IMG/VR virus record: IMGVR_UViG_3300017917_002466
Span: 186,001-250,000 of that record
Reading direction: 5' to 3' (one strand)
DNA length: 64,000 nt
In this document: positions 7,308-53,238 of the stretch, piece by piece
How the letters are laid out: each line of letters starts with the position of its first letter
How positions within the stretch are numbered: the first letter of the stretch is position 1
Translations under genes and position numbers: made by a program
Notes under the pieces: generated by a model
The model's database searches: none
The model's input: the letters and a program-made list of their open reading frames with translations, nothing else
What the model was told of the DNA's origin: nothing

Positions 7308-8747
7308 TTAAACCGCATCAAAAGGATTTGGTTTCTTTACCTCTGGGGATTTGGCCTCTTTCTTCTTTTGCAAGAACTTCTTGAAACCTTGCTTAAGCTG
7401 ATCGGCTTTGGACTTTGCAGTATCACCAACTTCCTCAGCTCCCTTCTTAATTACTTCTCCAGCCTTCTCTACACCAGATTTGACCTTGGTTTCTATATCA
7501 CCTTTTTCGATTGCTTCTTTAGCTTTCTCTATACCAGCCTTTGTTTTAGCTTCTATTCCTTTACCAACTTCCTCAGCTCCCTTTTCAATTTCCTTACTAA
7601 CTTTTTTAGTACCTTTTTCAATTTCTTTACCAACTTTTTCGGCTCCTTGTGTTACTTTTTCTCCGGCCTTTGCTCCCTGTTCTTTTACAATCTCAACAAT
7701 CTTTTCAGCATTCTTCTGTGCCTTTTTAAAAGCTTCTTCACCAGTATCACTCTTAGCAAAGACGTGTTGGCCTGAACCCATAATCATTAATATAAGAGCG
7801 GCAGCAGTTAGAACTTTAGGACTCTTCTTAGCAACAAGGTCAAGAATGTTCTCCTTCAAAATTTCTCCACTAAGAATTTCTTCCTCAAAAGTCAACTGCT
7901 TCTTATCCATCATATGTCTTGCAATATCCATTGCGTGAACGAAATCTTCCTTATTATCATTTAGCCACTGTATCATTTCGTCCTTTGAAAGACCCATGAC
8001 TTCTCCACAAACACCCTTGATCTTTTCCTGAATCCTCTTGAATGCGGCTCTTGCGGCTCCTTTCAAAGCGTCTATTCCTTTTCCTTCTTCAAGAACTCCA
8101 AGCTTCTTTGCCTTGAACTCGGAGAAAGATTCGGTCTTGGTATCATAAGCCTTATCACCCTTTTCCAACTTATCTGTCTTACTTGTACCTGACATATGAG
8201 CTTTATTTGGCTTAATATCCTTTGGTAATTCATAATCAGGTTTAAACTTATCAGAAACAATTGCTTCTCTATCTTCTGTATCAACTACTTCTTGTGGAAC
8301 CATTTTAGTCCAAGTTATCTTACCAATTTCATTTCCTTTAATAACTTCTTTAGTTTCCTCATCCTTCCTATCAGCAGTATCATCTATTAAATTATATTTT
8401 TTAATTTTCTTTTTCATAGCTTCTAAAATAGACTTAATGGGTTGTATAGATGAACCATATGTAAAAAAACTAAAAGGATTTTTTTCTTTAATAAAATTAT
8501 TAACGGCTTCAGCAAAACTAGAAGCAATTTTAGAATTTGAATCGTTTATACTAATTCTATGAGAAATACTGTTTTCAAATTCCAGTATCCAAGTATTAAA
8601 ATCTTCTGAACCATTTCCACCAACAGAATTGCATAATAATGCGTATTCTACTCCATCAACAACAAATCTATTTTCCCATTTTCCAGCCATTCCATTATAA
8701 ATTTGTTGACTTTCTAGTTTTTCTATTAAAATATTTTTAAAAGACAT
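7308..8747 (-). CDS. Putative virion internal polyprotein; CTS-like N-terminus, internal signal-peptide-like segment, K/E/A/G-rich helical repeats
   Basis: MSFKNILIE; internal TESFSEFK; KKSPKVLTAAALILMIMGSGQHVFA; LEA/apolipoprotein-like repeats. Confidence 0.6.
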   Translation of the reverse strand: MSFKNILIEKLESQQIYNGMAGKWENRFVVDGVEYALLCNSVGGNGSEDFNTWILEFENSISHRISINDSNSKIASSFAEAVNNFIKEKNPFSFFTYGSSIQPIKSILEAMKKKIKKYNLIDDTADRKDEETKEVIKGNEIGKITWTKMVPQEVVDTEDREAIVSDKFKPDYELPKDIKPNKAHMSGTSKTDKLEKGDKAYDTKTESFSEFKAKKLGVLEEGKGIDALKGAARAAFKRIQEKIKGVCGEVMGLSKDEMIQWLNDNKEDFVHAMDIARHMMDKKQLTFEEEILSGEILKENILDLVAKKSPKVLTAAALILMIMGSGQHVFAKSDTGEEAFKKAQKNAEKIVEIVKEQGAKAGEKVTQGAEKVGKEIEKGTKKVSKEIEKGAEEVGKGIEAKTKAGIEKAKEAIEKGDIETKVKSGVEKAGEVIKKGAEEVGDTAKSKADQLKQGFKKFLQKKKEAKSPEVKKPNPFDAV

Positions 8748-10644: not shown

Positions 10645-12069
10645 TTATTTCCAGTCTTTTATAAACTTTTCAATTGATTTCATATCATTTATATCAATTT
10701 CATTATTAAGTACATAATCTATTGTGTCTTTAATAATTTTACCAAATTGAATTCCTTGTTTAATATCTGGTCTTAATTTCATTATTAAAGCACCATTAAT
10801 AACTTTTTTAACAGGATCAACAATATCTTTACCTTTAACCATATTTCTGACTTTTTCTATTTTTTCTTGAATATCATCCCATTCTTTTTGGTCAAATAAA
10901 CTACCTCTGCTTTTATTATCACAATATGCCGTCTTTTCTAATAAATCAAAATATGGCGATTTAACTAAAGTAGCAACAGTACTATTATTCATTTTTAAAA
11001 TATCAAAAAATTTCATATGATTTTCGGCTACCCATTTTATAGCAGAAATTGTATCATTATCCATCTTCATTCTTTTACCAATTTCTTCTATCATCTTACC
11101 AGATTGTTCAGCATGGCCATGATAAGAATGGGTTCCTTTATCTGTTAATGCATATGTTTTATTTTTACCCAAATCATGCATTAATAAACACCAATTTAAT
11201 AAAGCATTAGGTTCTTTATTTACTTTAAGAACTTCCATGACATGACCGAAAACATTTGGAGATTCTGGATGGTGGTCTGGTGAATGTAACATTGACTCTT
11301 GTTCCACCAATTCAGGAAGAACATATTTCAATATTCCAATATCCTTTAACATAATAATAGCATCTGCAAACTTTGATCCGGATTGTTTTGCCATAGATGT
11401 AAGTTCTTTTAGTATTCTTTCTTGTGCGACCTTCTTTATCTCTGGTGCGTGTGACTTCATTGCTTCTAATGTTTCTTTGTCAATATCAAATCCAAGACGA
11501 GAAGCAAAACGAATTCCACGAAGAACTCTTACTTCATCTTCCTTAAAGCGTAAATTAGGATCACCAACGGCAGCAACCACTTTCTTTTCAATATGGTCTA
11601 ATCCACCATGATGGTCTATAATATTACCATCTTTATCAATACCAAGTTGATTGATTGTAAAATCTCTACGAGAAGCATCATCCTTAAATGATGTTGTAAG
11701 TTCTACTTTGTCAGCTCCTTTACCACCTTCACCAGAATACAAATCTTTTCTATAGGTAGCAATTTCTACGTTTTGACCTTTGTATGGAATAACAGTAACG
11801 CCCATAGCCTTATTCTTTCCAATGTCAATAGTTCTTCCAAATATCTTTTCTATTTCATCTGGAGTAGCATTAGTAGTAATATCAACATCATTTGGATTAT
11901 TACCTAATACCAAATCTCTAACAACACCACCAACCATGAGGGCTTCAAAACCAGCAGCATTGATCTTATCTAAAATCTCAATAGCGTTTCTGATTTCGGG
12001 ATTGCTTTGTTTAATGGAATCCCAGTTATTTAATTTAGTTTCTTGAAAGTAATACTTTTCAAATCTCAT
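10645..12069 (-). CDS. cca: CCA-adding tRNA nucleotidyltransferase (class II) with HD domain; CTS-like N-terminus
   Basis: VGGVVRD, DVDITT, RRDFTIN, EDxxRxxRxIRF, HD motif MHDLGK; starts MRFEKYYFQE. Confidence 0.92.
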   Translation of the reverse strand: MRFEKYYFQETKLNNWDSIKQSNPEIRNAIEILDKINAAGFEALMVGGVVRDLVLGNNPNDVDITTNATPDEIEKIFGRTIDIGKNKAMGVTVIPYKGQNVEIATYRKDLYSGEGGKGADKVELTTSFKDDASRRDFTINQLGIDKDGNIIDHHGGLDHIEKKVVAAVGDPNLRFKEDEVRVLRGIRFASRLGFDIDKETLEAMKSHAPEIKKVAQERILKELTSMAKQSGSKFADAIIMLKDIGILKYVLPELVEQESMLHSPDHHPESPNVFGHVMEVLKVNKEPNALLNWCLLMHDLGKNKTYALTDKGTHSYHGHAEQSGKMIEEIGKRMKMDNDTISAIKWVAENHMKFFDILKMNNSTVATLVKSPYFDLLEKTAYCDNKSRGSLFDQKEWDDIQEKIEKVRNMVKGKDIVDPVKKVINGALIMKLRPDIKQGIQFGKIIKDTIDYVLNNEIDINDMKSIEKFIKDWK

Positions 12070-12620
12070 TTTAATTTTTCCACGTTTAATATTTTAATTA
12101 AAGAATCAGAATAAGCTACATAAATTTTTCCTCTTCCTTGTATATCATCAGCAATAGACCCATAAACATTTAAATCATAAAGAAATTCAGAAGCTTTTTT
12201 ATCACTTTTAAAAGTATCTCTTAATATTCCATAAGTTTGATCTAAATTATAAGTTTCTCTATAACTTTCTAATTCTTCTTTCATATTATTAGCATCTTCA
12301 TCATAACCATTTTCTTCGAGTTTATTAGCTATATCTAAATATATATTTTCAGGAATAAGTTGATCCCATTCATAAAAATTTTCTAATCCATTAATTTTAA
12401 CTTCATATAAAAACATTCCCTGATGTTTTTTACCTAAAAAATTTTCACGAGCATAATATTCAGCCAATTCTATATTATCGGCAAAATATAATCCAAATCC
12501 ATATTTATTTAATCCATCGCCAGTTCCAACTTTATTCAAATCAAATTTATTAAAAGAATAAGCTGATCCATGATAAAGGACTTTAGATTCTTCTGTTAAA
12601 TAATATTCATCGAATTTCAT
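12066..12620 (-). CDS. ADP-ribosyltransferase-like protein; CTS-like N-terminus
   Basis: LYHGS...YGFGLYFADNIELAEYYA...LYEVKI ART-fold motifs; starts MKFDEYYLTEE. Confidence 0.65.
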   Translation of the reverse strand: MKFDEYYLTEESKVLYHGSAYSFNKFDLNKVGTGDGLNKYGFGLYFADNIELAEYYARENFLGKKHQGMFLYEVKINGLENFYEWDQLIPENIYLDIANKLEENGYDEDANNMKEELESYRETYNLDQTYGILRDTFKSDKKASEFLYDLNVYGSIADDIQGRGKIYVAYSDSLIKILNVEKLK

Positions 12621-13141
12621 GATACATACCTTGAAAATCTAGAAGCAGCTAATTTAGCATCTTCTAATGTTTTAATATCTTTACTTCCGTGTTTAATGAA
12701 TGGAGTTTTATCATCATTACTAAAATATTCATCAAATAACTTATCTCCAATTTTAAATCCACAAATTGCACGATGACTCCACCCATACCATTTTTTACTA
12801 GTAGGTGAATAACCAATACTACAAACAGAATGTTTAGGACTTACTTTTTCAAATTGTTTTATTTTAAATTTATCTGATAAATGTTTAGCTGTTTTAGAAT
12901 CACCAATCCAATCACCATTTTCATTGTATGCATTTAGCATTTCAAGTTTACCATTTCCACCATATTCACTATCATCTATTAATTCTTTTTTAATAATATA
13001 ACTACCATGATTTCTAGTAAAAATAATTTCTTTTATTTTGAATGGACTCGCTTCTAATAATATATTTTTAAAAGCTGGTTCTAATAATGATAAAAAATAT
13101 TCAGTTGAGTCTTCATTAAAATATAATTCGTCAAATCTCAT
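12617..13141 (-). CDS. Conserved phage hypothetical protein (WYGWSHRA motif); CTS-like N-terminus
   Basis: MRFDELYFNE; SIGYSPTSKKWYGWSHRAICGF. Confidence 0.7.
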   Translation of the reverse strand: MRFDELYFNEDSTEYFLSLLEPAFKNILLEASPFKIKEIIFTRNHGSYIIKKELIDDSEYGGNGKLEMLNAYNENGDWIGDSKTAKHLSDKFKIKQFEKVSPKHSVCSIGYSPTSKKWYGWSHRAICGFKIGDKLFDEYFSNDDKTPFIKHGSKDIKTLEDAKLAASRFSRYVS

Positions 13142-15687: not shown

Positions 15688-16293
15688 TTATGCTCCTTCA
15701 CTCTTTTCTTCCGGGTCTGAAAGGTGGAAATCTATTTGATCTTTGAACTTAAAGAAGTCTACAAGGTAAACATCGTTATCAGTCCAATTGATAAGCTCAA
15801 ACTTTTTCTCATCATCCATATCTTTAGGAAACGAAACCCATTCACTATTCTCATAATCCCAATACTTTTTGAAAGCATCTATTGGAACCATATGAGCAAC
15901 TGCTACAGAATGTCCCTGCTTTTCAATATCCATTGCCTTTGCGGAATCGTCTGTAACCATAACAAGCTTACCTTCTGTAAACTTATCATAAGAACCTTCT
16001 GGTCTATCCGCTGAATAGTAAACTATAAAAGTTCTCTTTGGTTTTTGTGTTACTTGTGGTTCAGATGGTGGTGTATTGAAATCTGTATTGCTTCTATCTC
16101 CACCAAGCTTCTGTTGTCTCTTGATTTTGACTTCCAATGGAGCATACTTCCACTGATCTTCTTTAGGAAGACTCTTTACCTTAATCTTATTACGCTGGCC
16201 GGATTTAGTCCTATGCCAAACATATCTTTGGCGCCAGTCGTCGTTAGGATTTCTTTCTTCTGTTAGTAAACAGAAAAATTGAAAATCATTCAT
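15688..16293 (-). CDS. Hypothetical protein; CTS-like N-terminus
   Basis: MNDFQFFCLLTEE; coupled operon. Confidence 0.7.
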   Translation of the reverse strand: MNDFQFFCLLTEERNPNDDWRQRYVWHRTKSGQRNKIKVKSLPKEDQWKYAPLEVKIKRQQKLGGDRSNTDFNTPPSEPQVTQKPKRTFIVYYSADRPEGSYDKFTEGKLVMVTDDSAKAMDIEKQGHSVAVAHMVPIDAFKKYWDYENSEWVSFPKDMDDEKKFELINWTDNDVYLVDFFKFKDQIDFHLSDPEEKSEGA

Positions 16294-17819
16294 TATTTAC
16301 CTAACTCCTTTTGAAGTCTTCCAAAAACTCCTGCGTGTTGCTTTGCAAGGGCTCCAGTAATCTTTGGCTGTTCACCCCTCTGAGCCTGCTCAATAGCATT
16401 ATTTAGAGCTTTGATTAATGAACCCCATTTCTTCTGTGCAGGTGCTTGGCCTTGTGCAATTGCTTGTTCTATTGCTTGCTCAAACTTTCCGGTAAGAGCA
16501 TCAACACTCTTTGCCAATCCTTCTGCACTTGCTTCCTGTGAAATAGGTACCTCAACATTTCCATCCTTTGGTCTGGAAACATATGCCTCAATTGCTTTCA
16601 TCAACACCTCTCTATTTCCTTGACTCTTTATAATCTTGGTAAAAAGGTCAGCTCTATCTTGACGAATTGGAACAAGTCTGGTAAACTTCTTTTTCATTTC
16701 CTCTGGAACCAATGCAAGGGCTTGTTCTCCTTTTTCGGCTGGCTTACCCTCCGCTGCATAAAGAGCAGCGAACTCGGGAGTTCCAACAACTGAAGTTAAT
16801 ATGTTTTCTAACTCTATCTGATAAGGAGTTCCTGAACCGTGAATAGGAAGGAAGATATGCTTCTTCTCTTTCTTCTTGCAATAGGAACACTTTCTACAGT
16901 CTCCCATACAATGAACCCCACGGGACACTGGTTCACCATTAAATTCCTTAAGCTCCTTCTTTTCAATCAAATCCATCACTCTGTTGAACTCTTCAAGCTC
17001 AAGAGGAACAAAGTTATTATCAAGCATAAATCCTGAACCATTTATACAAACATTGTCTCCCAAGTCTCCAATCTCTAAATCACTTCTATGTGTATATGTG
17101 TAAAGTGTAAGTGGGGCGCCCAATTTCTTAAGCTCATCACCAACTTGTTGTAACTTCTCAACATCGTTTACTTCAGCAAGCTTTGCTTTTCTTTCTTCTG
17201 GAACCCTTGCCAAAAGTTCTGGATTGGATGGAAGGTTTCTTATTTCTCCTGCTTCATTGATTCTGATGAACCTGATAGAAGGCATTACTTCGGCAATCTG
17301 TGCAATTCCCTGTGCAATTCCTCTTGCTGTCAAACAAGCCCACTGTTCTTCGTGTCTTAGGTTCTTTGCCAAAGCATCTTTCCATTGCTTCTCAAATCTA
17401 AGTGCATAACACTGACCATTCGGACCAAGCTTACAAGTTCCAAGGATTGCAGACATACAGTTACCGGCTGTTGACATATTAAGAAGAACTGTATCTCCAC
17501 CAATCTTTGCATTACCGGCGGCAACCTCAAAGTCTCTTTCAACTCCAGTCTCTGGGTCTTTCACCTTAGTTCTAAGCTTATTTGGCTTCTCTATCTTTTC
17601 TTCTTCGGAAAGATTATCAAAGTGTTCATAGGCTTCTTTAAGGCTCTTGAATATCTTGCCATCTCTTGACAATCTGATAACATCGTGTTCTATAAGCTCT
17701 GGAAGATACTTCAAAGGAATACCAATCTCAAGTTCACCCGTCTCGTTGATAGAGCAAAGGTCTAAATCAATGGGCATATAGAAAGTGTTATCTTTAAAGT
17801 AATGGTCTAAAAATCTCAT
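16293..17819 (-). CDS. Gp88-like Fe-S/radical-SAM-like protein with helical C-terminal extension; CTS-like N-terminus
   Basis: NMSTAGNCMSAILGTC...CYA, IRINEAGEI, YTYTH, CMGDCRKCSYC match the Gp88 family pattern; MRFLDHYFKD. Confidence 0.6.
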   Translation of the reverse strand: MRFLDHYFKDNTFYMPIDLDLCSINETGELEIGIPLKYLPELIEHDVIRLSRDGKIFKSLKEAYEHFDNLSEEEKIEKPNKLRTKVKDPETGVERDFEVAAGNAKIGGDTVLLNMSTAGNCMSAILGTCKLGPNGQCYALRFEKQWKDALAKNLRHEEQWACLTARGIAQGIAQIAEVMPSIRFIRINEAGEIRNLPSNPELLARVPEERKAKLAEVNDVEKLQQVGDELKKLGAPLTLYTYTHRSDLEIGDLGDNVCINGSGFMLDNNFVPLELEEFNRVMDLIEKKELKEFNGEPVSRGVHCMGDCRKCSYCKKKEKKHIFLPIHGSGTPYQIELENILTSVVGTPEFAALYAAEGKPAEKGEQALALVPEEMKKKFTRLVPIRQDRADLFTKIIKSQGNREVLMKAIEAYVSRPKDGNVEVPISQEASAEGLAKSVDALTGKFEQAIEQAIAQGQAPAQKKWGSLIKALNNAIEQAQRGEQPKITGALAKQHAGVFGRLQKELGK

Positions 17820-32568: not shown

Positions 32569-34074
32569 TTATTCCTTTCCTATTCTCATTAGCTTTTCAA
32601 ACATCATTTGACCTTCTTCATTATTTTTCTCAGCTATTTTAATATCTAAGTAATATGATTCTGGCAATGTCACATAAAGCACAAAAGTTTTCTCTAAGCC
32701 ATATATTTCATCTTTATTCATAGTAGGCATGTTTAGTATGCTTCTATCAAAAAACGAAATTGGAATATCTTCTTCTCCTGTTATATATCCTTTCTCAATT
32801 GAAAGATTTCTTAATTGAGTACCAGAAAACGGAATGAATGTAAATACATTCAAATGACATTTTCCTTTAAGGATTTCAAAGGCTTTTTTAGTTAATCCTA
32901 TTGTTTCAAAAACTTCTTCTCTTGTTTCATCCGGCAGCCCAATCATACAGTTGATAACTGGAATAATATCATACTTAGCCAATTCTTTAAAAGCCGATAT
33001 AATTTGGATATTTGATAAACGCTTATCTAATAATTCTTTCCTTATTCTTTCTGAACCATGTTCCAAACCAACTGCAATAGATTTACAACCCATTTCGGCC
33101 AATAATTTAGTCTTTTCTTCAGTAAGAGTATCTAATCTACTTTGACAAAAGAATGGTAAGCCAACTTCTTTTTTGTAGCGAATAGCAAAATCTTTAAAAT
33201 CTTTCCTTGATAAAGCTGTAAAAGTTTCAGAAAAAAATGACAAATAGTCAATATCAAATTCCTTAACTAAGTATTTGATTTCATCGAAAATCTTATCGTA
33301 CTTTTTAACTCTATAATATCGACCAATATTTTCAGCCTTACATAAATTTTTGATAGCGGGTGCGGCACAATATGTACACCACCACGGACAACCCCTATCA
33401 GTATCAATGGGCATTACCCTAACAACCTTTCCAGAAAAAGGTCTATAAAACCTATAATTCTCATATATTGAAAAATCAGGCATAGGAGTTTTGTTTATAT
33501 CAACCAATGCCCTTAATGGATTTTTAACTATCCCACCATCTTTAATTGTGTAGATATTCTTAATTTTTGAGCAGTCTTTATTTTCCATGATATTAGTGGC
33601 TAATTCAACTATTGTTTCTTCACCTTCACCAATACAAACATAATCAACTAACCCACTTTTTAGAATCCTTTCATATGCAAAAGTTGCTCCTACACCTCCA
33701 AAAACTACTGGTATTTTCTTATCTTTAATCAGCTTTAAAAAATCTAATGAAAAGAAAATCGTACTATCAATAACCGATATTCCGATTAAGTCTGGTTGAT
33801 AATCGTTGATAGTTTTTACAAAATCCTCATAAATATTTTCAGTTTTACCTTTAAAGTAATTCTCAATATTTGTTTTCTTAACGTGTCCTAATTTGGTTCG
33901 CACATCATCATTAGTTTCAGTTTTAGACTTATAAATGCTACAATCAAATAACTTAGTTATAAATCCGGCTTGTTTTAAACAAGCCGATAATATAGCTAAA
34001 TGAGTGGGAGCAATTCCTAATAATGATTGATTAGGATAGAATAATAAGACTTTAAAATCTTTTTTAGTATCCAT
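32569..34074 (-). CDS. Cobalamin-binding radical SAM enzyme (copy 1)
   Basis: N-terminal B12 domain (GGVGAT, GEGE); RGCPWWCTYC; VGLEHG. Confidence 0.9.
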   Translation of the reverse strand: MDTKKDFKVLLFYPNQSLLGIAPTHLAILSACLKQAGFITKLFDCSIYKSKTETNDDVRTKLGHVKKTNIENYFKGKTENIYEDFVKTINDYQPDLIGISVIDSTIFFSLDFLKLIKDKKIPVVFGGVGATFAYERILKSGLVDYVCIGEGEETIVELATNIMENKDCSKIKNIYTIKDGGIVKNPLRALVDINKTPMPDFSIYENYRFYRPFSGKVVRVMPIDTDRGCPWWCTYCAAPAIKNLCKAENIGRYYRVKKYDKIFDEIKYLVKEFDIDYLSFFSETFTALSRKDFKDFAIRYKKEVGLPFFCQSRLDTLTEEKTKLLAEMGCKSIAVGLEHGSERIRKELLDKRLSNIQIISAFKELAKYDIIPVINCMIGLPDETREEVFETIGLTKKAFEILKGKCHLNVFTFIPFSGTQLRNLSIEKGYITGEEDIPISFFDRSILNMPTMNKDEIYGLEKTFVLYVTLPESYYLDIKIAEKNNEEGQMMFEKLMRIGKE

Positions 34075-46275: not shown

Positions 46276-46860
46276 TTATCTTTTGAACGAATAATAGAAG
46301 TCTACTAAACTTCTATCCTTCTTTACTTTTTCAAATACTTCCTTGGAGTCTTTATTGGTTCTTATGATTTTGTAATCTTCTACGGGGTTTCTTTCGCCGG
46401 TTTCTGATCTTTGCTGGGATTGCTTGATTGCGACTTCTTCGGGAACATCTATGTGAATGAGCACTGTTGTAAATCCATTTGCCTTTGCAAGCTGAAGTTT
46501 CGCAATAGTTCCATTTAGATTTGCATTAGTACCAGTATGAATGAAGGATTCTTTTTTAGTAAAGGCTATTGGGAGTTCTTTTTTAAACTGAGAGGTAGCT
46601 TTACCGGCGAGTTCTCTTTTGTATTCTCCGCCGCCTATCTTAGAAGCTAAAATATCTACATCATAAACTGGTAAGTTACCAACTACTTTCTTTAGAACAT
46701 TATCAATGAAGTATGTCTTTCCTGAACCAATTCCACCACCAACGGAAATAAAGAGCTTATCTTCTAAATAGGTCTTCAAGTCGTCAATATTGTTTAACGA
46801 CCTACCATAAAAGGTATCGCTCTCGTAAAACTCAATAAAGTTATGGATTTGGTAGGTCAT
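46276..46860 (-). CDS. P-loop kinase (zeta-toxin/AAA_33-like); CTS-like N-terminus
   Basis: GGIGSGKT, DVD, R-x3-R lid; HNFIEFYES; start moved to MTYQ. Confidence 0.75.
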   Translation of the reverse strand: MTYQIHNFIEFYESDTFYGRSLNNIDDLKTYLEDKLFISVGGGIGSGKTYFIDNVLKKVVGNLPVYDVDILASKIGGGEYKRELAGKATSQFKKELPIAFTKKESFIHTGTNANLNGTIAKLQLAKANGFTTVLIHIDVPEEVAIKQSQQRSETGERNPVEDYKIIRTNKDSKEVFEKVKKDRSLVDFYYSFKR

Positions 46861-47257
46861 AAGAAGAATCCCCTCGCATTGCATCATCTACGGCTAAAGG
46901 TTTATAACTCTGTGGTGGTTTTGGTTCTTCCTTTGGAAGTATCTTTACCTTCTCCACCTTATCTTGAATGTTTCGCAGAAATTTACTCTTTGCTTTATTA
47001 ATGATTTCGTGAATTCTCTGCTTGACCTTCTTTATATATGAGTTATCACCTTGCATATACTGTCGGATTTCGTTTCCAACAGCCACATCAAAATCGCCGT
47101 AGTTAGGGAATCTTCTTTCAAGATAGTTACAAAGTCTTGAAACAAATGCAGGATTTAAACCAACTGAAGCAGACTCTTCCTCTATCAGAAGTTTTACTTC
47201 ATTGGTGAAAGCTTTGGCTTCGCTTTCTTGAAAATAATGATCTTGAAATTTCTTCAT
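46841..47257 (-). CDS. Hypothetical protein; CTS-like N-terminus
   Basis: MKKFQDHYFQES. Confidence 0.7.
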   Translation of the reverse strand: MKKFQDHYFQESEAKAFTNEVKLLIEEESASVGLNPAFVSRLCNYLERRFPNYGDFDVAVGNEIRQYMQGDNSYIKKVKQRIHEIINKAKSKFLRNIQDKVEKVKILPKEEPKPPQSYKPLAVDDAMRGDSSYDLPNP

Positions 47258-48204
47258 TATAGCATTGTCTTTTCTGAAAGGTATATAGTAGATTCTTTCA
47301 AATGACTTTCAAGATTACTTCTTAACCTCTTTATAACTTCGTCTTCATTCTGTTTCAAACAAAATGCCGATACAATGAATTCTCTTAGCTGTGCAAAGGT
47401 GAAATCCTTTGTCTTCTCAGCCAACTCCATAATCCTCTTTTCATCCTGATGTTCCTTTAGCTTTGCTTTTAAGTAGGCATATCTTCCAGTTGTTGGTGGA
47501 TTTCCAATCTCTATCTTCCTATCAAATCTGGAAGCTCTAAGAATTCTAGGAGGAAGTCTATCAATATAGTTAGTTGTTCCAAGAAACAATACATTGTTGG
47601 TCTGTGCATCACCATCAAAAAGCTCAAGGATAGCGTGTTCTCCATACTTTACAATCTCGTCAATGTCTTCCATAATGACAAGAATCTTTCTCTCTGGCTC
47701 AACTTCTCTTACAACTTTAAGTGCTTCAACAAGGTCGTGTGCTTCTCTAGTAATGAAAACTATGTTACCCTTACTTACCATATCTTCCATTGCTAACTTC
47801 AAAAGTGCACTCTTACCACTTCCCGGTTGACCATAAAGAAGAACTCCTCTCTTATGAGTGAATCCATACTTCTTAAAATCATCCTTCAATGTCCAGAAGT
47901 TATCAATCTCTTGAAGTATCTTAGTATAACGAGAATCTTCAAAGCGAAGAATATCATCAGTATTAATATCGTGAACTTCAAAGAAAACACCAGACATATT
48001 TCTCTGTATTCTGAAAACACCAGCGGGAATAGTCTTCTCGGTTACTACTTCACCAACAGGCTGAAAAGAATTACCTTGCACGATATACTTCTTGTAAATC
48101 TGCTTTCTCTTACTTGGTTGTGTTGAAAGAACCTTTGGACCAATATCAATTGGTTCAGCCTTTAAACAGGATTGATTTTCTTTGATAAATTCTCTAAAGC
48201 TCAT
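47257..48204 (-). CDS. AAA+ ATPase; CTS-like N-terminus
   Basis: GQPGSGKS, MEDID, TTN, RASRFD; MSFREFIKE. Confidence 0.92.
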   Translation of the reverse strand: MSFREFIKENQSCLKAEPIDIGPKVLSTQPSKRKQIYKKYIVQGNSFQPVGEVVTEKTIPAGVFRIQRNMSGVFFEVHDINTDDILRFEDSRYTKILQEIDNFWTLKDDFKKYGFTHKRGVLLYGQPGSGKSALLKLAMEDMVSKGNIVFITREAHDLVEALKVVREVEPERKILVIMEDIDEIVKYGEHAILELFDGDAQTNNVLFLGTTNYIDRLPPRILRASRFDRKIEIGNPPTTGRYAYLKAKLKEHQDEKRIMELAEKTKDFTFAQLREFIVSAFCLKQNEDEVIKRLRSNLESHLKESTIYLSEKTML

Positions 48205-48524: not shown

Positions 48525-49937
48525 TTATAAATTCTTTAATCTTATAATATTAGCTATTTCTTCTTTTTCTTCGGTTGTTAAAATCTCTGGTGTCCATTTC
48601 ATTGATTTTAGATATTCCAAATTGTTTCTTATATTAGAAGCTGAAATTTTTTCATCCGATTCTTCGCCCACTCTACCGAATTCCATAATCCGTACTTTAG
48701 AGTATTTATCTTTATGTTTTACAAAATAATCATACTTCTTCGTATCGCCTTCTGTTCCTCCGATAAGAACCTGACTAACTTCGTTCTGGTGAGTATCCAC
48801 CCAATCGTATATATCTTTAACCGGTGTTATTTTACTTAACAATATTTCAACTGGTTTGTTGATATGCCTTATATAAACTTCCCATATCTTTTTAGATTGT
48901 TCGGCTGTGATAGTTTCTCCTTCTCTCAGCTTATGACCAATAAAAATGATTATCTTATCAGACTGTTTTGATAGTTGTTCAACTATACTAAAATGTCCTT
49001 TGTGTGGTGGTTTAAACCCACCGGCATACAATCCTATAATTCCAGCATCACTACTTTCCCAAAAGTAATGTTCAACAAAGTTGCCAGAGAAAGCCTGTTT
49101 GATTTTATTAATGGCTCCCAATTTCATTTTTTCTTTTGCTGTTCCAACTTCACCAGATTTAACTGATACTAAAGATTGAAAGGTACCAGGGATTCTTCTT
49201 CTTGATCTTGGCTGTTTAACTTGTTTATTAACTGAATCTAATAGTTCATCGAAGCTACTATATATGTTATAATTGTGAAACAGTTTTTCCACATCAGGCC
49301 AATTAGTTGTAGACCAAACATCTATATGTCCAACATCTCTACTATCTTTAACATCAACGACTCTTAAAGTTAACTTATTAGAGGAAAGATTAAATTCATA
49401 CTCTTGATCTTTTTCTAATGCGGGCACTTTTCTAATTCCTAATTTCTTAAAAACAGTATTGTAATCTTCTTCTAACAACAACACTTTAGCCAAAGCCACC
49501 AGTATGCCTTGTTTATCTGCCGGTAGATTTAGGAACTGTTCTTTGAAATCATATTCCTCTGTGGACAAAGCAATGATATTATCTATTTGAATATTACCTT
49601 CAGCCCCAACAATAGGATACAAAATCGTAATTATTTCACCTGAATTATAATACTTACGTCCTTTATATAGTGAAGATTGGAAAGGAACAATAACTCTATC
49701 TGGCATAGATGATACATAATCTATAATTGCTTTTTTGACTGCTTTCTTATCGTTTCCCTTAAAATGAACTACTATATCTAAATCACCATAATCATCTTTG
49801 GATTTTATTTTAGCACTACCTGTTAATTTGGCATTTTGAAAATCAGGAATATTTTGTAGTACTTTTCTCTGATAATCAGCAAAAGTTCTATCAACATTGC
49901 TTTTTAGTATTCTGGAACCACCAGCAACTCCACTCAT
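48525..49937 (-). CDS. Pol-beta-superfamily nucleotidyltransferase fused to an HxGH cytidylyl/adenylyltransferase domain
   Basis: TGS...YGDLDIV...QIDN; GGFKPPHKGH; internal NFVEHYFWES at the junction. Confidence 0.8.
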   Translation of the reverse strand: MSGVAGGSRILKSNVDRTFADYQRKVLQNIPDFQNAKLTGSAKIKSKDDYGDLDIVVHFKGNDKKAVKKAIIDYVSSMPDRVIVPFQSSLYKGRKYYNSGEIITILYPIVGAEGNIQIDNIIALSTEEYDFKEQFLNLPADKQGILVALAKVLLLEEDYNTVFKKLGIRKVPALEKDQEYEFNLSSNKLTLRVVDVKDSRDVGHIDVWSTTNWPDVEKLFHNYNIYSSFDELLDSVNKQVKQPRSRRRIPGTFQSLVSVKSGEVGTAKEKMKLGAINKIKQAFSGNFVEHYFWESSDAGIIGLYAGGFKPPHKGHFSIVEQLSKQSDKIIIFIGHKLREGETITAEQSKKIWEVYIRHINKPVEILLSKITPVKDIYDWVDTHQNEVSQVLIGGTEGDTKKYDYFVKHKDKYSKVRIMEFGRVGEESDEKISASNIRNNLEYLKSMKWTPEILTTEEKEEIANIIRLKNL

Positions 49938-50890
49938 TATATTCTCCTATCTTCAAAATAAATATCTTCAAACTTTAGCGATTCGGTTTTATACTTTATA
50001 AGTTTAGAATTGTCTGGTAAAAACTTTCCTTTTAATCCAAGTCTATCTTGGTTTTTAATCCAGTATTCTTGAAGGTCTTCTGGTATATCTGCTCTTGTAC
50101 TATCTAATATCTTTAGGTAAGTATCGTACAATTTATTCAAATCTTCTTTAGATAGATTAGCTCTTACAAATTTTTGTAGCTTAAAATAGTCTTCCAGTAT
50201 ATTTTCGTTTATATCAAACTTATATATTTTGTTTAAAAGTTCAATAGCTTCTTTTGGATTGGAAGCTGCCATCTCTTGCGTTTCTTTATTCTTCACACCA
50301 TAATTATGCGAGAAGGTATATCCCTTGATTGCATAAAGGGCTAACATAAGTTGTGTTCTGTGCAATCCTTTTACATTACCGCTATATGTCGATGAATAAT
50401 ATGCGAAACTAAGCCAATCAATATTACCAACATTCAAATCTATTTGAACCCAATCTTTGAGTTTCTTTCCCGAAGAATCGAATTGTGGGAAAGCAAAAAA
50501 CAAAGAACCACCAATACTACCTTTAGTATCTAAATGAATATCCTTGACTTTTTCAAGAATTTTTTCTGATAGAGCCACTAAAATAGCTCTTTTCATAATT
50601 TGCTGGTCTGTGGAAGTTTTTGACCTTTTCTTAAAATTATTGAAAAGACTATTGATATGTTCTTGGTCTAAATTCCATTCTTTGATGTTCTTAAAAATAT
50701 CTTCGGATATAGCCAAGTCTATATCACCAGAAACATCCTTCTTTCCTACTGAACCCAGTGTTCTAATATCTTTAAAGTATTTCCGAGCTTTAGGAAAAAC
50801 AGTGGCCAACTCTTCATAGAACTTGGCAAGAGTTGGTTCAATGTTTTCCTTGCGAATCGAAGTTGTTAAATCAAAAACATTTCCACCCAT
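49937..50890 (-). CDS. Pol-beta-superfamily nucleotidyltransferase (MGGNVF type)
   Basis: LGSVGKKDVSGDIDLA...VQIDL. Confidence 0.75.
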   Translation of the reverse strand: MGGNVFDLTTSIRKENIEPTLAKFYEELATVFPKARKYFKDIRTLGSVGKKDVSGDIDLAISEDIFKNIKEWNLDQEHINSLFNNFKKRSKTSTDQQIMKRAILVALSEKILEKVKDIHLDTKGSIGGSLFFAFPQFDSSGKKLKDWVQIDLNVGNIDWLSFAYYSSTYSGNVKGLHRTQLMLALYAIKGYTFSHNYGVKNKETQEMAASNPKEAIELLNKIYKFDINENILEDYFKLQKFVRANLSKEDLNKLYDTYLKILDSTRADIPEDLQEYWIKNQDRLGLKGKFLPDNSKLIKYKTESLKFEDIYFEDRRI

Positions 50891-50930
50891 TATTAGTTCC
50901 TTTCTTTAATAGATAATAACATTTTCTTTT

Positions 50931-50975
50931 TCAAAAATCAACAAGCCAACCAAATTATTAGTTTGATTGGCTTGT
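50931..50975 (-). terminator. Intrinsic terminator
   Basis: ACAAGCCAATCAAA/TTTGGTTGGCTTGT stem then TGATTTTT. Confidence 0.7.
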
Positions 50976-51025
50976 CTTCAAATCAATTCCTCTCTTTTTG
51001 TTTATTTCAACTTGAAGCCATTTCC

Positions 51026-53074
51026 TTATCCCTTGAAACCACCTTTCTTATATTCTGGTGGCAAAGCTGGTGCACTAATCTTCTCTACTTTTTGACCAGT
51101 CTTACCCGGCTTAGCTGTAAAGCTTCCCTTTGGAGCAGCCTTGGAAGGAGCCTTTGGTGCACTACCAACCTTCTCAATCTTCTTTGGTGGTGCTTTTGGC
51201 TTTGCTGTCAATGCTGTTGATGGGCCTTTCTTAGCAGGAGAAGATGGTGCAGATGGAATCTTCTCAATCTTCTCACCTGGCTTGCTTGGCTTTGCTGTCA
51301 ACGCTGCTGTTGGGCCCTTGACAACTGGTGCCTTTGGAGCTGGCTTAATTGAAGCAATAGTCTGATTGATAACACCTGGCTTAGAAGTTAATCCACCACC
51401 TTGAGTAGTTGCCATCTTTGGAGGTGTCAATGCATCTTCGTCAAGATCAAAGTATTTATTAGCGGCAATCTTTACAAAGCTAAGAGACTCTTCCTGACTT
51501 CCAGAGGCTTCTTCATCATCGTCTTCTGATTCCTCTCCCTCTTTTTCATCATCCTCAGATTCCTTTGGTTTCTCTGCTTCTTCTTCAGCAGGAGCAGCTT
51601 CTTCCTCACCACCAAGTTCAGCAGAAGTCTTCTGAAGCAACCATTCAAACGGGTCGCCAGTTCTTGCCTTCATTGTTCCATATGGCATTTCATCTGCATA
51701 GTAATCCATCAATGCCTGATAAAGCTCATCTGATGGATCGTTCTGTGGGTCTGCTATCCAAGCCTTAAGCTCTTCAAACTGTTCAGGAGAAAGGGCTTTC
51801 TGAAGTCCAACTGATCCTAGCTCTTCCTCACCCTTATCACAAGGAACACATTCTTCTGCACCGGCTGGGCAAGACTTTTCCTCTGCTTTCTCAGAATCTT
51901 CTAATTTTTCTGTTTCTTCTTCAGCATTAGGTGAAACTGCACTCTTTGCTAGTTCACCAAGGGTCTGTTCCATTTCTTCAATCTGCTCAAGATCAAAATA
52001 GTTTTCTGTTCCTTCCTTATCAATACAAATAACTTCGTTATTCTCAGTAATAGAATTGACCTTATACCACTTGCTTTCAACCTTTACAAGAGTATTGATA
52101 AGCTTTTGAAGATCAAGACTCTCAAGTTCAGTAGAACCAATTACACGAACAGGAGCAACGATACATTCTTCTGCATCGCCTTCTTCCTCACCTTCACCGG
52201 CGGCAATATCTTCCCAATCAATTTCCCCAGCATCCTCAGGCTCTTCACCTGCATCCTCTGGTTCCTCGCCAGCATCCTCAGGCTCTTCACCTGCGTCTTC
52301 TGGCTCTTCACTAACATCCTCTGATTCATCACCAAACTCATCAGCTTCAGAAACAAGCTTCTTATTACTTGAAGTAGATTCTTCTTCAGTTCCAGAAATT
52401 TCTTCCTCGGATGCACCGGCTCCCTCTGATTCTCCCTCGGCCGGTTCTTCCTCGGACTCTCCCTTCTCAACCTTAAATCCCTTGAAAAGATTCTCAAGTG
52501 AATCTACAAATGCCTTTGCTTCTTCTTCGTCTTCAAAATCGTGTTCAGACTTTTCAAGACCAGTGTTTTCAGAAGGCTCAACCGTTACTTTGTTATCCAC
52601 AACGGAAACTTTTACTACCTTCTCATCTTCTCCTTCTCCACCAACCGATCCTCCCATTTCTGTTCCAAGTTCCTCAGTTGGCTCTACCTCGTCCATTTCT
52701 TCCTTGACTACATCCTTCTTACCTTTCTTACTTTCAGTTTCCATTCCAGTAACAGAAGTACGTGTTGAACCCTTCTGAACATCTCCTGTATTAATAATAA
52801 TTTTAACATCCCCTTCTTCTAAAGAGTTTATTTTTTCAATAATATAATTCAAATTTTCTTTAACAAAAATAGAATCTATATTTTTAGGAGAAATTTTTGG
52901 ATTTACAAACTCATTTTGAATTTTAAAGATAGCATTCTTTTTATCAATATATGGTTCGTCAAATGCTGCTTTAATTACTTCAATTACTTTATTCCATTTT
53001 TCAGAAATAATCTTCTCAGTAGAAGAAACATCTTCTTTATAATTTTCCTTTAAATAGCTTAAAAATTCCAACAT
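51026..53074 (-). CDS. Large acidic low-complexity protein with P/K/A-rich C-terminal repeats; CTS-like N-terminus (head core/scaffold-like)
   Basis: Start 53074 (AGGAG RBS, MLEFLSYLKE); E/D-rich body; basic repeats KGPxxALTAKPxxPxxKIEK. Confidence 0.7.
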   Translation of the reverse strand: MLEFLSYLKENYKEDVSSTEKIISEKWNKVIEVIKAAFDEPYIDKKNAIFKIQNEFVNPKISPKNIDSIFVKENLNYIIEKINSLEEGDVKIIINTGDVQKGSTRTSVTGMETESKKGKKDVVKEEMDEVEPTEELGTEMGGSVGGEGEDEKVVKVSVVDNKVTVEPSENTGLEKSEHDFEDEEEAKAFVDSLENLFKGFKVEKGESEEEPAEGESEGAGASEEEISGTEEESTSSNKKLVSEADEFGDESEDVSEEPEDAGEEPEDAGEEPEDAGEEPEDAGEIDWEDIAAGEGEEEGDAEECIVAPVRVIGSTELESLDLQKLINTLVKVESKWYKVNSITENNEVICIDKEGTENYFDLEQIEEMEQTLGELAKSAVSPNAEEETEKLEDSEKAEEKSCPAGAEECVPCDKGEEELGSVGLQKALSPEQFEELKAWIADPQNDPSDELYQALMDYYADEMPYGTMKARTGDPFEWLLQKTSAELGGEEEAAPAEEEAEKPKESEDDEKEGEESEDDDEEASGSQEESLSFVKIAANKYFDLDEDALTPPKMATTQGGGLTSKPGVINQTIASIKPAPKAPVVKGPTAALTAKPSKPGEKIEKIPSAPSSPAKKGPSTALTAKPKAPPKKIEKVGSAPKAPSKAAPKGSFTAKPGKTGQKVEKISAPALPPEYKKGGFKG
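52227..52310 (-). repeat. 4 x 21-bp coding tandem repeat (EEPEDAG)
   Basis: Units 1 and 3 identical (CCAGCATCCTCAGGCTCTTCA on plus). Confidence 0.95.
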
Positions 53075-53160
53075 ATCTTTTCTCCTTTTTGGTCGTTTTC
53101 TAAAGCTTTCAATTTTTTCTTTTTCTATTTTACAAATATTACAATTTTTTTTCATACAAT

Positions 53161-53238
53161 CCCCCAAGACAAGGAAATCTCCAAGACTTTTAGTATTTTA
53201 AAGGAAAAAGTAAAGTCTTGGTTCTACTTCTTGTCGGG
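53161..53238 (-). promoter_or_regulatory. Long hairpin occluding the RBS of a short Cys-containing upstream frame
   Basis: CCAAGACTTT/AAAGTCTTGG plus GACAAG/CTTGTC and CTCCC/GGGGG arms. Confidence 0.5.

What the first reader, a model, noticed from the sequence alone, without database searches (positions are those of the whole stretch)
49053..51494. Internal and C-terminal copies of the tag mark domain junctions: possible protease-processed polyproteins
Seen: NFVEHYFWES lies exactly between the Pol-beta and HxGH domains of 48525-49937 (~49053-49083); KTESLKFEDIYFE ends the 49937-50890 protein (~49952-49990); EESLSFVKIAANKYFDLDE precedes the basic repeat tail of 51026-53074 (~51436-51494). Similar internal copies: KTESFSEFK in 7308-8747 (~8101-8140), a second FKNILLE in 12617-13141, and FKSLKEAYE in the Gp88-like protein. 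Inference: the tags are portable modules that record gene fusions and let the head protease release separate enzymes, or allow non-N-terminal targeting.
Basis: inference. Interest (0 to 1): 0.6.

Follow-up and report, generated by a model that had tools for sequence, protein, structure and literature searches.

The report
Movable capsid-targeting tags in T4-like phage
A large T4-like phage places its short "pack me into the head" peptide between two enzyme domains and at a protein's end as well as at protein starts, which suggests the signal works wherever it sits, though only comparison and not experiment shows this.

Summary
The window lies in a 253,664-bp T4-like phage genome that encodes a portal, a gp21-type prohead protease, a scaffold and a gp23 capsid protein. 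About two dozen of its proteins start with a 9-10 residue peptide resembling the T4 capsid targeting sequence (CTS).

  - One (49053-49082) fills the only disordered stretch between a PolX-like nucleotidyltransferase domain and an NMNAT-like domain.
  - The other (49949-49978) is a disordered C-terminal extension of the paralogous nucleotidyltransferase.
  - Both are kept in the nearest metagenomic relatives and absent from more distant ones.
  - Thirteen of the 120 best-matching orthologues carry the tag at the N-terminus instead, with [LI]-x-E directly before the conserved mature start.
- **Stand-alone NMNAT-like homologues begin with a CTS-like peptide at the equivalent place.** The tree, however, suggests the fusion is older than the tag.
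- **The third copy (51437-51487) is a different motif.** It resembles the C-terminal end of gp22-type scaffolds.
- **Two of the minor copies are at chance level.**

Packaging and cleavage are inferred, not shown. I rate this a new variant of a known kind.

The parts
48525..49937 (-). Gene for a 470-aa two-domain protein: a PolX-like nucleotidyltransferase (aa 1-283) fused to an NMNAT/cytidylyltransferase-like HxGH domain (aa 297-470).
   Evidence: Pfam PF01467 matches aa 303-438. AlphaFold2 gives mean pLDDT 90.6 with two domains. Foldseek matches the N-terminal domain to pol lambda, pol beta and PolX.
49053..49082 (-). Internal copy of the tag (aa 286-295), lying in the interdomain linker.
   Evidence: Scores 18.4 bits. 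It is the only segment of the model with pLDDT below 50 (residues 286-296). It is conserved in P0134-P0137 at 15-21.9 bits, whereas untagged junctions score 2.5 bits or less.
49937..50890 (-). Gene for the paralogous 317-aa nucleotidyltransferase, which has no N-terminal tag.
   Evidence: It aligns to the first domain of the 470-aa protein and to the immuto gp089 family. AlphaFold2 mean pLDDT is 88.9.
49940..49987 (-). C-terminal extension of 16 residues that more distant orthologues lack. The tag proper is at 49949-49978.
   Evidence: Alignments A2 and A5 show the extension. It is kept in the reading frame of this gene in the six nearest relatives. Residues 306-317 have pLDDT below 50.
51026..53074 (-). 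Gene for a 682-aa protein: an N-terminal tag (53045-53074), a long acidic region and a basic repeat tail (51029-51436). The likely true start is at 53074, not 53167.
   Evidence: ORF listing and translation. The tag at Met32 of the long ORF scores 12.8 bits. Homologues occur in L015, L017 and L018.
51437..51487 (-). Motif at the boundary between the acidic and basic parts. It is not the tag. It resembles the C-terminal end of gp22-type scaffolds, pattern [FY]-[AV]-x(2,3)-A-[NS]-[KR]-[FY], and is followed by L-D-E.
   Evidence: Only 3.1 bits on the tag matrix. It is conserved in three relatives' contigs. It is similar to the end of this genome's scaffold protein and to the end of T4 gp22. The pattern hits only the scaffold, the portal and this protein in the whole genome.
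13052..13141 (-). Two tags in tandem (13112-13141 and 13052-13075) ahead of a Tad6 (Thoeris inhibitor) domain.
   Evidence: Pfam PF25188, E = 1.4e-36, starting at residue 47. The second tag scores 11.8 bits and is almost identical to the N-terminal tag of 7308-8747.

Best explanation
The tag is this phage lineage's version of the T4 capsid targeting sequence (CTS). In T4 the CTS is a short propeptide that docks a protein onto the scaffolding core of the prohead and ends in a site for the gp21 protease (hydrophobic residue, any residue, Glu).

In this phage and its nearest relatives the same peptide has been placed at two non-N-terminal positions. One is the flexible linker of a PolX-like/NMNAT-like two-domain enzyme. 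The other is the C-terminal end of the paralogous nucleotidyltransferase. Both enzymes have a conserved native N-terminus.

The most likely function is loading these enzymes into the head so that they are injected with the DNA. At the internal copy, cleavage after its final Glu would separate the two enzymes inside the head. That would leave the first enzyme with a C-terminal tag, like its paralogue.

**Shown:**
- The motif copies exist, and they are conserved in relatives.
- They lie in disordered segments.
- The tag changes position among orthologues.
- The genome encodes a gp21-type protease with a conserved L-T-E site in the capsid protein.

**Inferred:**
- Binding to the core.
- Packaging into the head.
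- Cleavage.
- Injection.

The motif at 51437-51487 is a separate element that mimics the scaffold's C-terminal end.
For: **The genome is T4-like.** It has Peptidase_S77 (6.4e-24) and Gp23 (7.6e-87) matches, and portal, protease and scaffold PHROG matches. The capsid protein's V-L-T-E aligns with F-L-T-E of T4 gp23.

**The tag resembles the T4 CTS.** The CTS sequence comes from PMC8442874. In T4, residues 4 and 7 matter for targeting and residues 8 and 10 for processing (PMC9026906). The tag has aromatic residues, I/L/F and Glu at the matching positions.

**The copies are conserved.** Relatives at 55-76% identity keep both copies, while more distant relatives lack them.

**The copies are disordered.** Each tag is the only low-confidence segment of its model.

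**N-tagged orthologues fit protease processing.** All 13 have [LI]-x-E directly before the conserved G-G-N-V-F start, which is the N-terminus that untagged orthologues have after the initiator Met. L010 shows the same arrangement.

**Stand-alone NMNAT-like homologues start with a CTS-like peptide**.

**Precedent for C-terminal processing.** T4 Alt loses a C-terminal propeptide to gp21 (PMC5694885).
Against: - There are no virion proteomics, cleavage data or packaging data for this phage or any relative.
- T4 experiments placed the CTS only at the N-terminus.
- The C-terminal copy ends in Asp at the position where Asp blocks processing in T4, and no [LI]-x-E lies upstream of it, so it may never be removed.
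- The stand-alone homologues' N-termini score low on this genome's matrix. Their likeness is to the general CTS pattern, not to this genome's own version of it.
- Several tagged proteins are enzymes that need not be virion cargo.
- Immuto-like phages have the protease but no tag on these proteins.
Confidence: 0.55

Rival explanations
1. The tag is a short linear motif for something other than the head. It might bind a phage or host hub protein, or act as a stability or localisation signal. Its resemblance to the T4 CTS would then be convergent.
For: Function is untested. The tagged set includes a tRNA nucleotidyltransferase, AAA ATPases and an NMNAT-like enzyme, which could act in the cytoplasm of the cell where they are made. 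The motif works at either end of a protein, which is typical of docking motifs.
Against: The match to the T4 CTS falls at the functionally mapped positions. Every genome that could be checked has a gp21-type protease. N-tagged orthologues carry [LI]-x-E exactly before the mature start, which points to removal by a Glu-specific protease.
Confidence: 0.2
2. The non-N-terminal copies are neutral scars. The internal one would be the fossil start of a once separate tagged gene. The C-terminal one would be a leftover of a shifted or deleted gene start. Neither would have a present function.
For: Stand-alone tagged NMNAT-like genes exist, and in L010 one sits directly after a nucleotidyltransferase gene. 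Two relatives have Met as the first residue of the C-terminal tag.
Against: Both copies are kept in relatives at 55-76% identity although they lie in disordered segments whose flanks vary in length and sequence. The C-terminal copy stays in the frame of the upstream gene in all seven sequences, while the few residues after it differ. The tree places the tagged fusions among untagged ones.
Confidence: 0.12
3. The two nucleotidyltransferase genes are joined by a programmed -1 frameshift, so the C-terminal tag is really an internal junction of a larger polyprotein.
For: The downstream gene is in the -1 frame and overlaps the stop codon by one base. The same frame relation holds in L015.
Against: There is no slippery heptamer, and a TAG in the -1 frame lies four codons before the downstream ATG. 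An A-G-G-A-G ribosome-binding site precedes that ATG. The downstream start is conserved in all relatives. Such overlaps are ordinary in phages.
Confidence: 0.02
4. The copies are chance matches.
For: At 12.7 bits the C-terminal copy alone is within chance expectation.
Against: The junction copy's score, the conservation of both copies in relatives, and their location in the only disordered segments.
Confidence: 0.03

Closest known systems
T4 capsid targeting sequence of internal proteins IPI-IPIII (Mullaney and Black 1996, as reviewed in PMC9026906)
   Same: About 10 residues long, with aromatic residues three apart, then I/L/F-x-Glu. It sits on otherwise unrelated cargo proteins in a phage with gp21, gp22 and gp23 homologues.
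   Different: In T4 it is known only at N-termini and on a handful of small basic proteins. Here it is on about two dozen proteins, many of them enzymes. It also occurs in an interdomain linker, at C-termini, and once in tandem.
T4 Alt, which is processed by gp21 at both ends (PMC5694885)
   Same: An injected enzyme with a C-terminal propeptide as well as an N-terminal one.
   Different: Alt's C-terminal propeptide is 63 residues long and is not reported to resemble the CTS. Its role is unknown.
Encapsulin cargo-loading peptides
   Same: A short, disordered, terminal peptide that loads enzymes into an HK97-fold shell, and that occurs at either end of the cargo depending on the lineage.
   Different: They bind the shell protein directly and are not removed by a maturation protease. 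There is no sequence relation. This is an analogy only.
T4 prohead core proteins gp22 and gp68
   Same: The motif at 51437-51487 resembles the last residues of gp22-type scaffolds. The acidic-then-basic layout of the 682-aa protein recalls gp68.
   Different: BLASTP finds no similarity to gp68. The protein is five times longer. The motif is internal rather than terminal.

Membership tests
T4-type capsid targeting sequence (CTS) | The phage builds a T4-type prohead with a gp21-family protease, a gp22-type scaffold and a gp23 shell. | tested here: met
T4-type capsid targeting sequence (CTS) | A peptide of about 10 residues with aromatic or hydrophobic residues at the targeting positions, and I/L-x-Glu at the processing positions. 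| tested here: met
   Met by the N-terminal tags and by the junction copy, using the T4 positions. The C-terminal copy has Glu-Asp at its end.
T4-type capsid targeting sequence (CTS) | Located at the N-terminus of the cargo. | tested here: not met
   The two copies are at aa 286-295 of 470 and aa 305-314 of 317. This is the point of difference.
T4-type capsid targeting sequence (CTS) | Sufficient to bring a protein into the prohead. | not testable with these tools
   Needs packaging assays. The one complex prediction gave no verdict.
T4-type capsid targeting sequence (CTS) | Removed by the prohead protease after Glu. | not testable with these tools
   Indirect only: [LI]-x-E sits directly before the conserved mature start in 13 N-tagged orthologues.
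Protease-processed polyprotein | One translation product with two or more independently folding functional units joined by an accessible linker. | tested here: met
   Two confident domains joined by a disordered linker. The second domain exists as a stand-alone protein elsewhere.
Protease-processed polyprotein | Cleavage at the junction releases the units. | not testable with these tools
   No proteomic data are available.
gp22-type scaffold C-terminal motif | The pattern [FY]-A-x-x-A-[NS]-[KR]-[FY] at or near the end of the scaffold protein. | tested here: inconclusive
   The pattern is present at the ends of T4 gp22 and of this genome's scaffold, and internally in the 682-aa protein and its relatives. 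It rests on two scaffolds only. The immuto scaffold ends differently.

The most novel reading that the evidence does not exclude
The capsid targeting sequence of T4-like phages may be a position-independent loading signal that evolution moves between the N-terminus, the C-terminus and interdomain linkers of the same enzyme family. That would let these phages pack multi-enzyme precursors, cut them apart inside the head, and inject the pieces. The cargo here would be a PolX-like nucleotidyltransferase plus an NMNAT-like enzyme, alongside a tagged Thoeris inhibitor and a tRNA nucleotidyltransferase, forming a ready-made counter-defence kit.
Probability: 0.35. Interest if true: 0.75.

Novelty: new variant of a known kind. 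Interest (0 to 1): 0.6.

Why it matters
The CTS is known from a few T4 internal proteins, always at the N-terminus, and its receptor in the prohead is still undefined.

A natural series in which one enzyme family carries the tag at the start, at the end, in a linker or not at all offers three things:
- It says what the signal needs, namely a free and flexible peptide rather than a free N-terminus.
- It gives a sequence rule for predicting virion cargo in uncultured T4-like phages.
- It suggests C-terminal or internal tags as options for loading proteins whose N-terminus must stay native into T4-based delivery particles.

It also predicts that these phages inject NAD-related and anti-Thoeris proteins, which can be tested by proteomics.

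Tried and rejected
- **Complex prediction.** The prohead protease folded with the 49-residue linker segment gave no verdict. It is not evidence either way.
- **Late promoter.** The T4 late-promoter word T-A-T-A-A-A-T-A occurs at the frequency expected by chance in this AT-rich genome (46 and 38 sites against 38 expected), so it says nothing about when tagged genes are expressed.
- **Tag-coding DNA.** The tag-coding stretches are no more alike than the peptide similarity and codon bias explain, so there is no sign of recent copying or recombination between tags.
- **Relatives of another C-terminally tagged protein.** A search for relatives of the protein at genome 33518-33982 found none.
- **Scaffold search.** A scaffold search of isolated phages found only two weak hits, so the scaffold-end motif rests on T4 and this genome alone.
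- **Tad6 search.** A Tad6 search of isolated phages did not cover the N-terminal tags.
- **Extra C-terminal half of immuto gp088.** It has no counterpart in this genome.
- **Similarity to T4 gp68.** None was found by BLASTP.
- **Programmed frameshift.** A frameshift joining the two nucleotidyltransferase genes was rejected from the sequence.
Full report
**Genome.** The window is bases 186001-250000 of a 253,664-bp virus record with terminal repeats. The genome encodes a Peptidase_S77 (gp21-type) prohead protease and a Gp23 capsid protein. These sit beside portal and scaffold genes. The capsid protein's propeptide has L-T-E where T4 gp23 has its L-T-E. That T4 gp23 is cut there is established knowledge. 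The nearest isolated phage is Flavobacterium phage immuto, at about 50-60% protein identity for the genes studied.

**The tag.** Many minus-strand genes start with M-x-F-x-[ED]-[FY]-[ILY]-x-E, or with a form one residue longer, M-[RKN]-F-x-x-x-Y-[FL]-x-[ED].
- A loose version of the pattern is about 10-fold enriched at ORF starts (p = 1.5e-11).
- The T4 CTS is MKTYQEFIAE (PMC8442874).
- In T4, residues 4 and 7 matter for targeting and residues 8 and 10 for gp21 processing. Asp at position 10 blocks processing but not targeting (PMC9026906).
- The tags here have aromatic residues, I/L/F and Glu at the matching places. For example, the AAA ATPase gene at 47257-48204 begins MSFREFIKE.

**Check of the observation.** On a matrix trained on this genome's N-terminal tags:
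- the junction copy scores 18.4 bits, with 0.115 hits at 16 bits or more expected by chance;
- the C-terminal copy scores 12.7 bits;
- the second tag ahead of the Tad6 domain scores 11.8 bits;
- the peptides in 51026-53074, 7308-8747 and 16293-17819 score 3.1-4.7 bits, which is background.

**The junction copy (49053-49082).**
- AlphaFold2, run on 41 homologues, gives two confident domains (mean pLDDT 90.6). The single segment below pLDDT 50 is residues 286-296, which is the tag.
- The first domain resembles family X polymerases. The second matches cytidylyltransferase-like and NMNAT families.
- Of 120 homologues, the four nearest (55-60% identity, 467-470 aa) keep [SN]-F-x-E-H-Y-F-[FYW]-E-S at this place, although the flanks differ in length.
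- Of the remaining 115, the 103 whose junction could be extracted have a shorter linker without the tag. Those are mostly the 670-700-aa immuto-like proteins.
- A search with the HxGH domain alone finds stand-alone proteins of 180-192 aa. Their first 8-10 residues are CTS-like and lie 5-15 residues before the conserved G-G-F-K-P-P-H motif.
- In contig L010 such a gene follows a nucleotidyltransferase gene that has its own N-terminal tag. The neighbouring genes also start with tag-like peptides.
- However, on a tree of the NMNAT-like domain the fused forms are one clade and the tagged ones a single subclade (SH-aLRT 92) that is not clearly basal. Forcing all untagged fusions into one clade costs 6.6 log-likelihood units (p-AU 0.040; the group was named after seeing the tree).
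- The tag was therefore probably inserted into an existing linker, or was lost repeatedly. It is not established as a fossil of the fusion.

**The C-terminal copy (49949-49978).**
- Relative to most orthologues (302-303 aa), the window's protein has a 16-residue extension.
- The six nearest relatives (70-76% identity) all have such an extension. Each has F-x-[DE]-x-Y-[FY] in the frame of this gene, while the residues after it vary.
- AlphaFold2 (mean pLDDT 88.9) leaves only residues 306-317 below pLDDT 50.
- Thirteen other orthologues instead have a 15-18 residue N-terminal extension, M-x-S-F-x-x-[YF]-[YF], ending in [LI]-x-E immediately before the conserved G-G-N-V-F. L010 has the same arrangement.
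- Untagged proteins start M-G-G-N-V-F. Removal of the propeptide after Glu would therefore recreate the native N-terminus. This is the best indirect sign of gp21-type processing. It also suggests why a lineage might place the tag at the other end of the protein.
- C-terminal tag-like matches recur in this genome, at genome positions 33349-33516, 33518-33982 and 106061-106408. They are more frequent than in shuffled sequences or interior windows.

**The third motif (51437-51487).**
- It is conserved at the boundary between the acidic and basic parts in three relatives' contigs, but it is not the tag.
- It resembles the last residues of this genome's scaffold and of T4 gp22.
- The pattern drawn from those sequences hits only the scaffold, the portal and this protein in the whole genome.
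- It is followed by L-D-E. I read it as an element that mimics the scaffold's end, in a core or internal protein whose basic tail would be freed by cleavage. This is a lead, not a result.

**Mechanism.**
- Shown: the motif copies, their conservation, their disorder, their mobility among orthologues, and the T4-type head machinery.
- Inferred by analogy with T4: docking to the core, encapsidation, cleavage after the tag's Glu, and injection.
- T4 Alt gives a precedent for a C-terminal propeptide (PMC5694885).
- I found no report of an internal or C-terminal CTS in the searchable literature.

**Limits.** There is no experimental data on any of these phages. The matrix is trained on one genome. 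The nearest relatives are short metagenomic contigs.

Noticed in passing
window 12617-13141 (-): A Tad6 (type I Thoeris inhibitor) domain (Pfam E = 1.4e-36) preceded by two tags in tandem. If tags mean packaging, this phage would inject an anti-Thoeris protein.
   Followed up: partly
window 10645-12069 (-), 47257-48204 (-), 46841-47257 (-), 46276-46887 (-): A tRNA nucleotidyltransferase (CCA-adding type), an AAA ATPase, a 138-aa protein and a P-loop kinase-like protein all carry N-terminal tags. Orthologues of the last two in L015 and L018 are tagged too.
   Followed up: partly
genome 33349-33516 (-), 33518-33982 (-), 106061-106408 (+) (outside the window; L012, L013): Three more proteins end in tag-like peptides. 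Two of them are adjacent small basic proteins just upstream of the portal gene, separated from it by an HNH endonuclease gene.
   Followed up: partly
genome 30457-32343 (-), portal protein residue about 305: The portal contains the same F-V-K-x-L-A-N-R-Y pattern as the motif at window 51437-51487 and the end of the scaffold. The meaning is unknown.
   Followed up: no
window 51026-53167 (-): The longest ORF starts at 53167, but a tag at Met32 indicates the real start is 53074. The protein has four tandem acidic heptad-like repeats and a threefold basic proline/lysine-rich repeat tail.
   Followed up: partly
P0152, P0202 and similar 482-aa homologues of the 470-aa protein: These start with a five-residue M-I-L-L-E ahead of the conserved S-G-V-A-G-G. 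This could be a minimal propeptide ending in L-x-E.
   Followed up: no
L001 9001-11724 (immuto gp088) and 670-700-aa metagenomic homologues: In immuto-like phages the same two-domain protein carries a further C-terminal region with two H-E-x-x-H motifs (metallopeptidase-like). That region is absent from the window's genome.
   Followed up: partly
window about 22161-43998 (-): A long run of glycosyltransferase-like and B12/radical-SAM-like genes lies between the tagged gene clusters. It was not examined.
   Followed up: no
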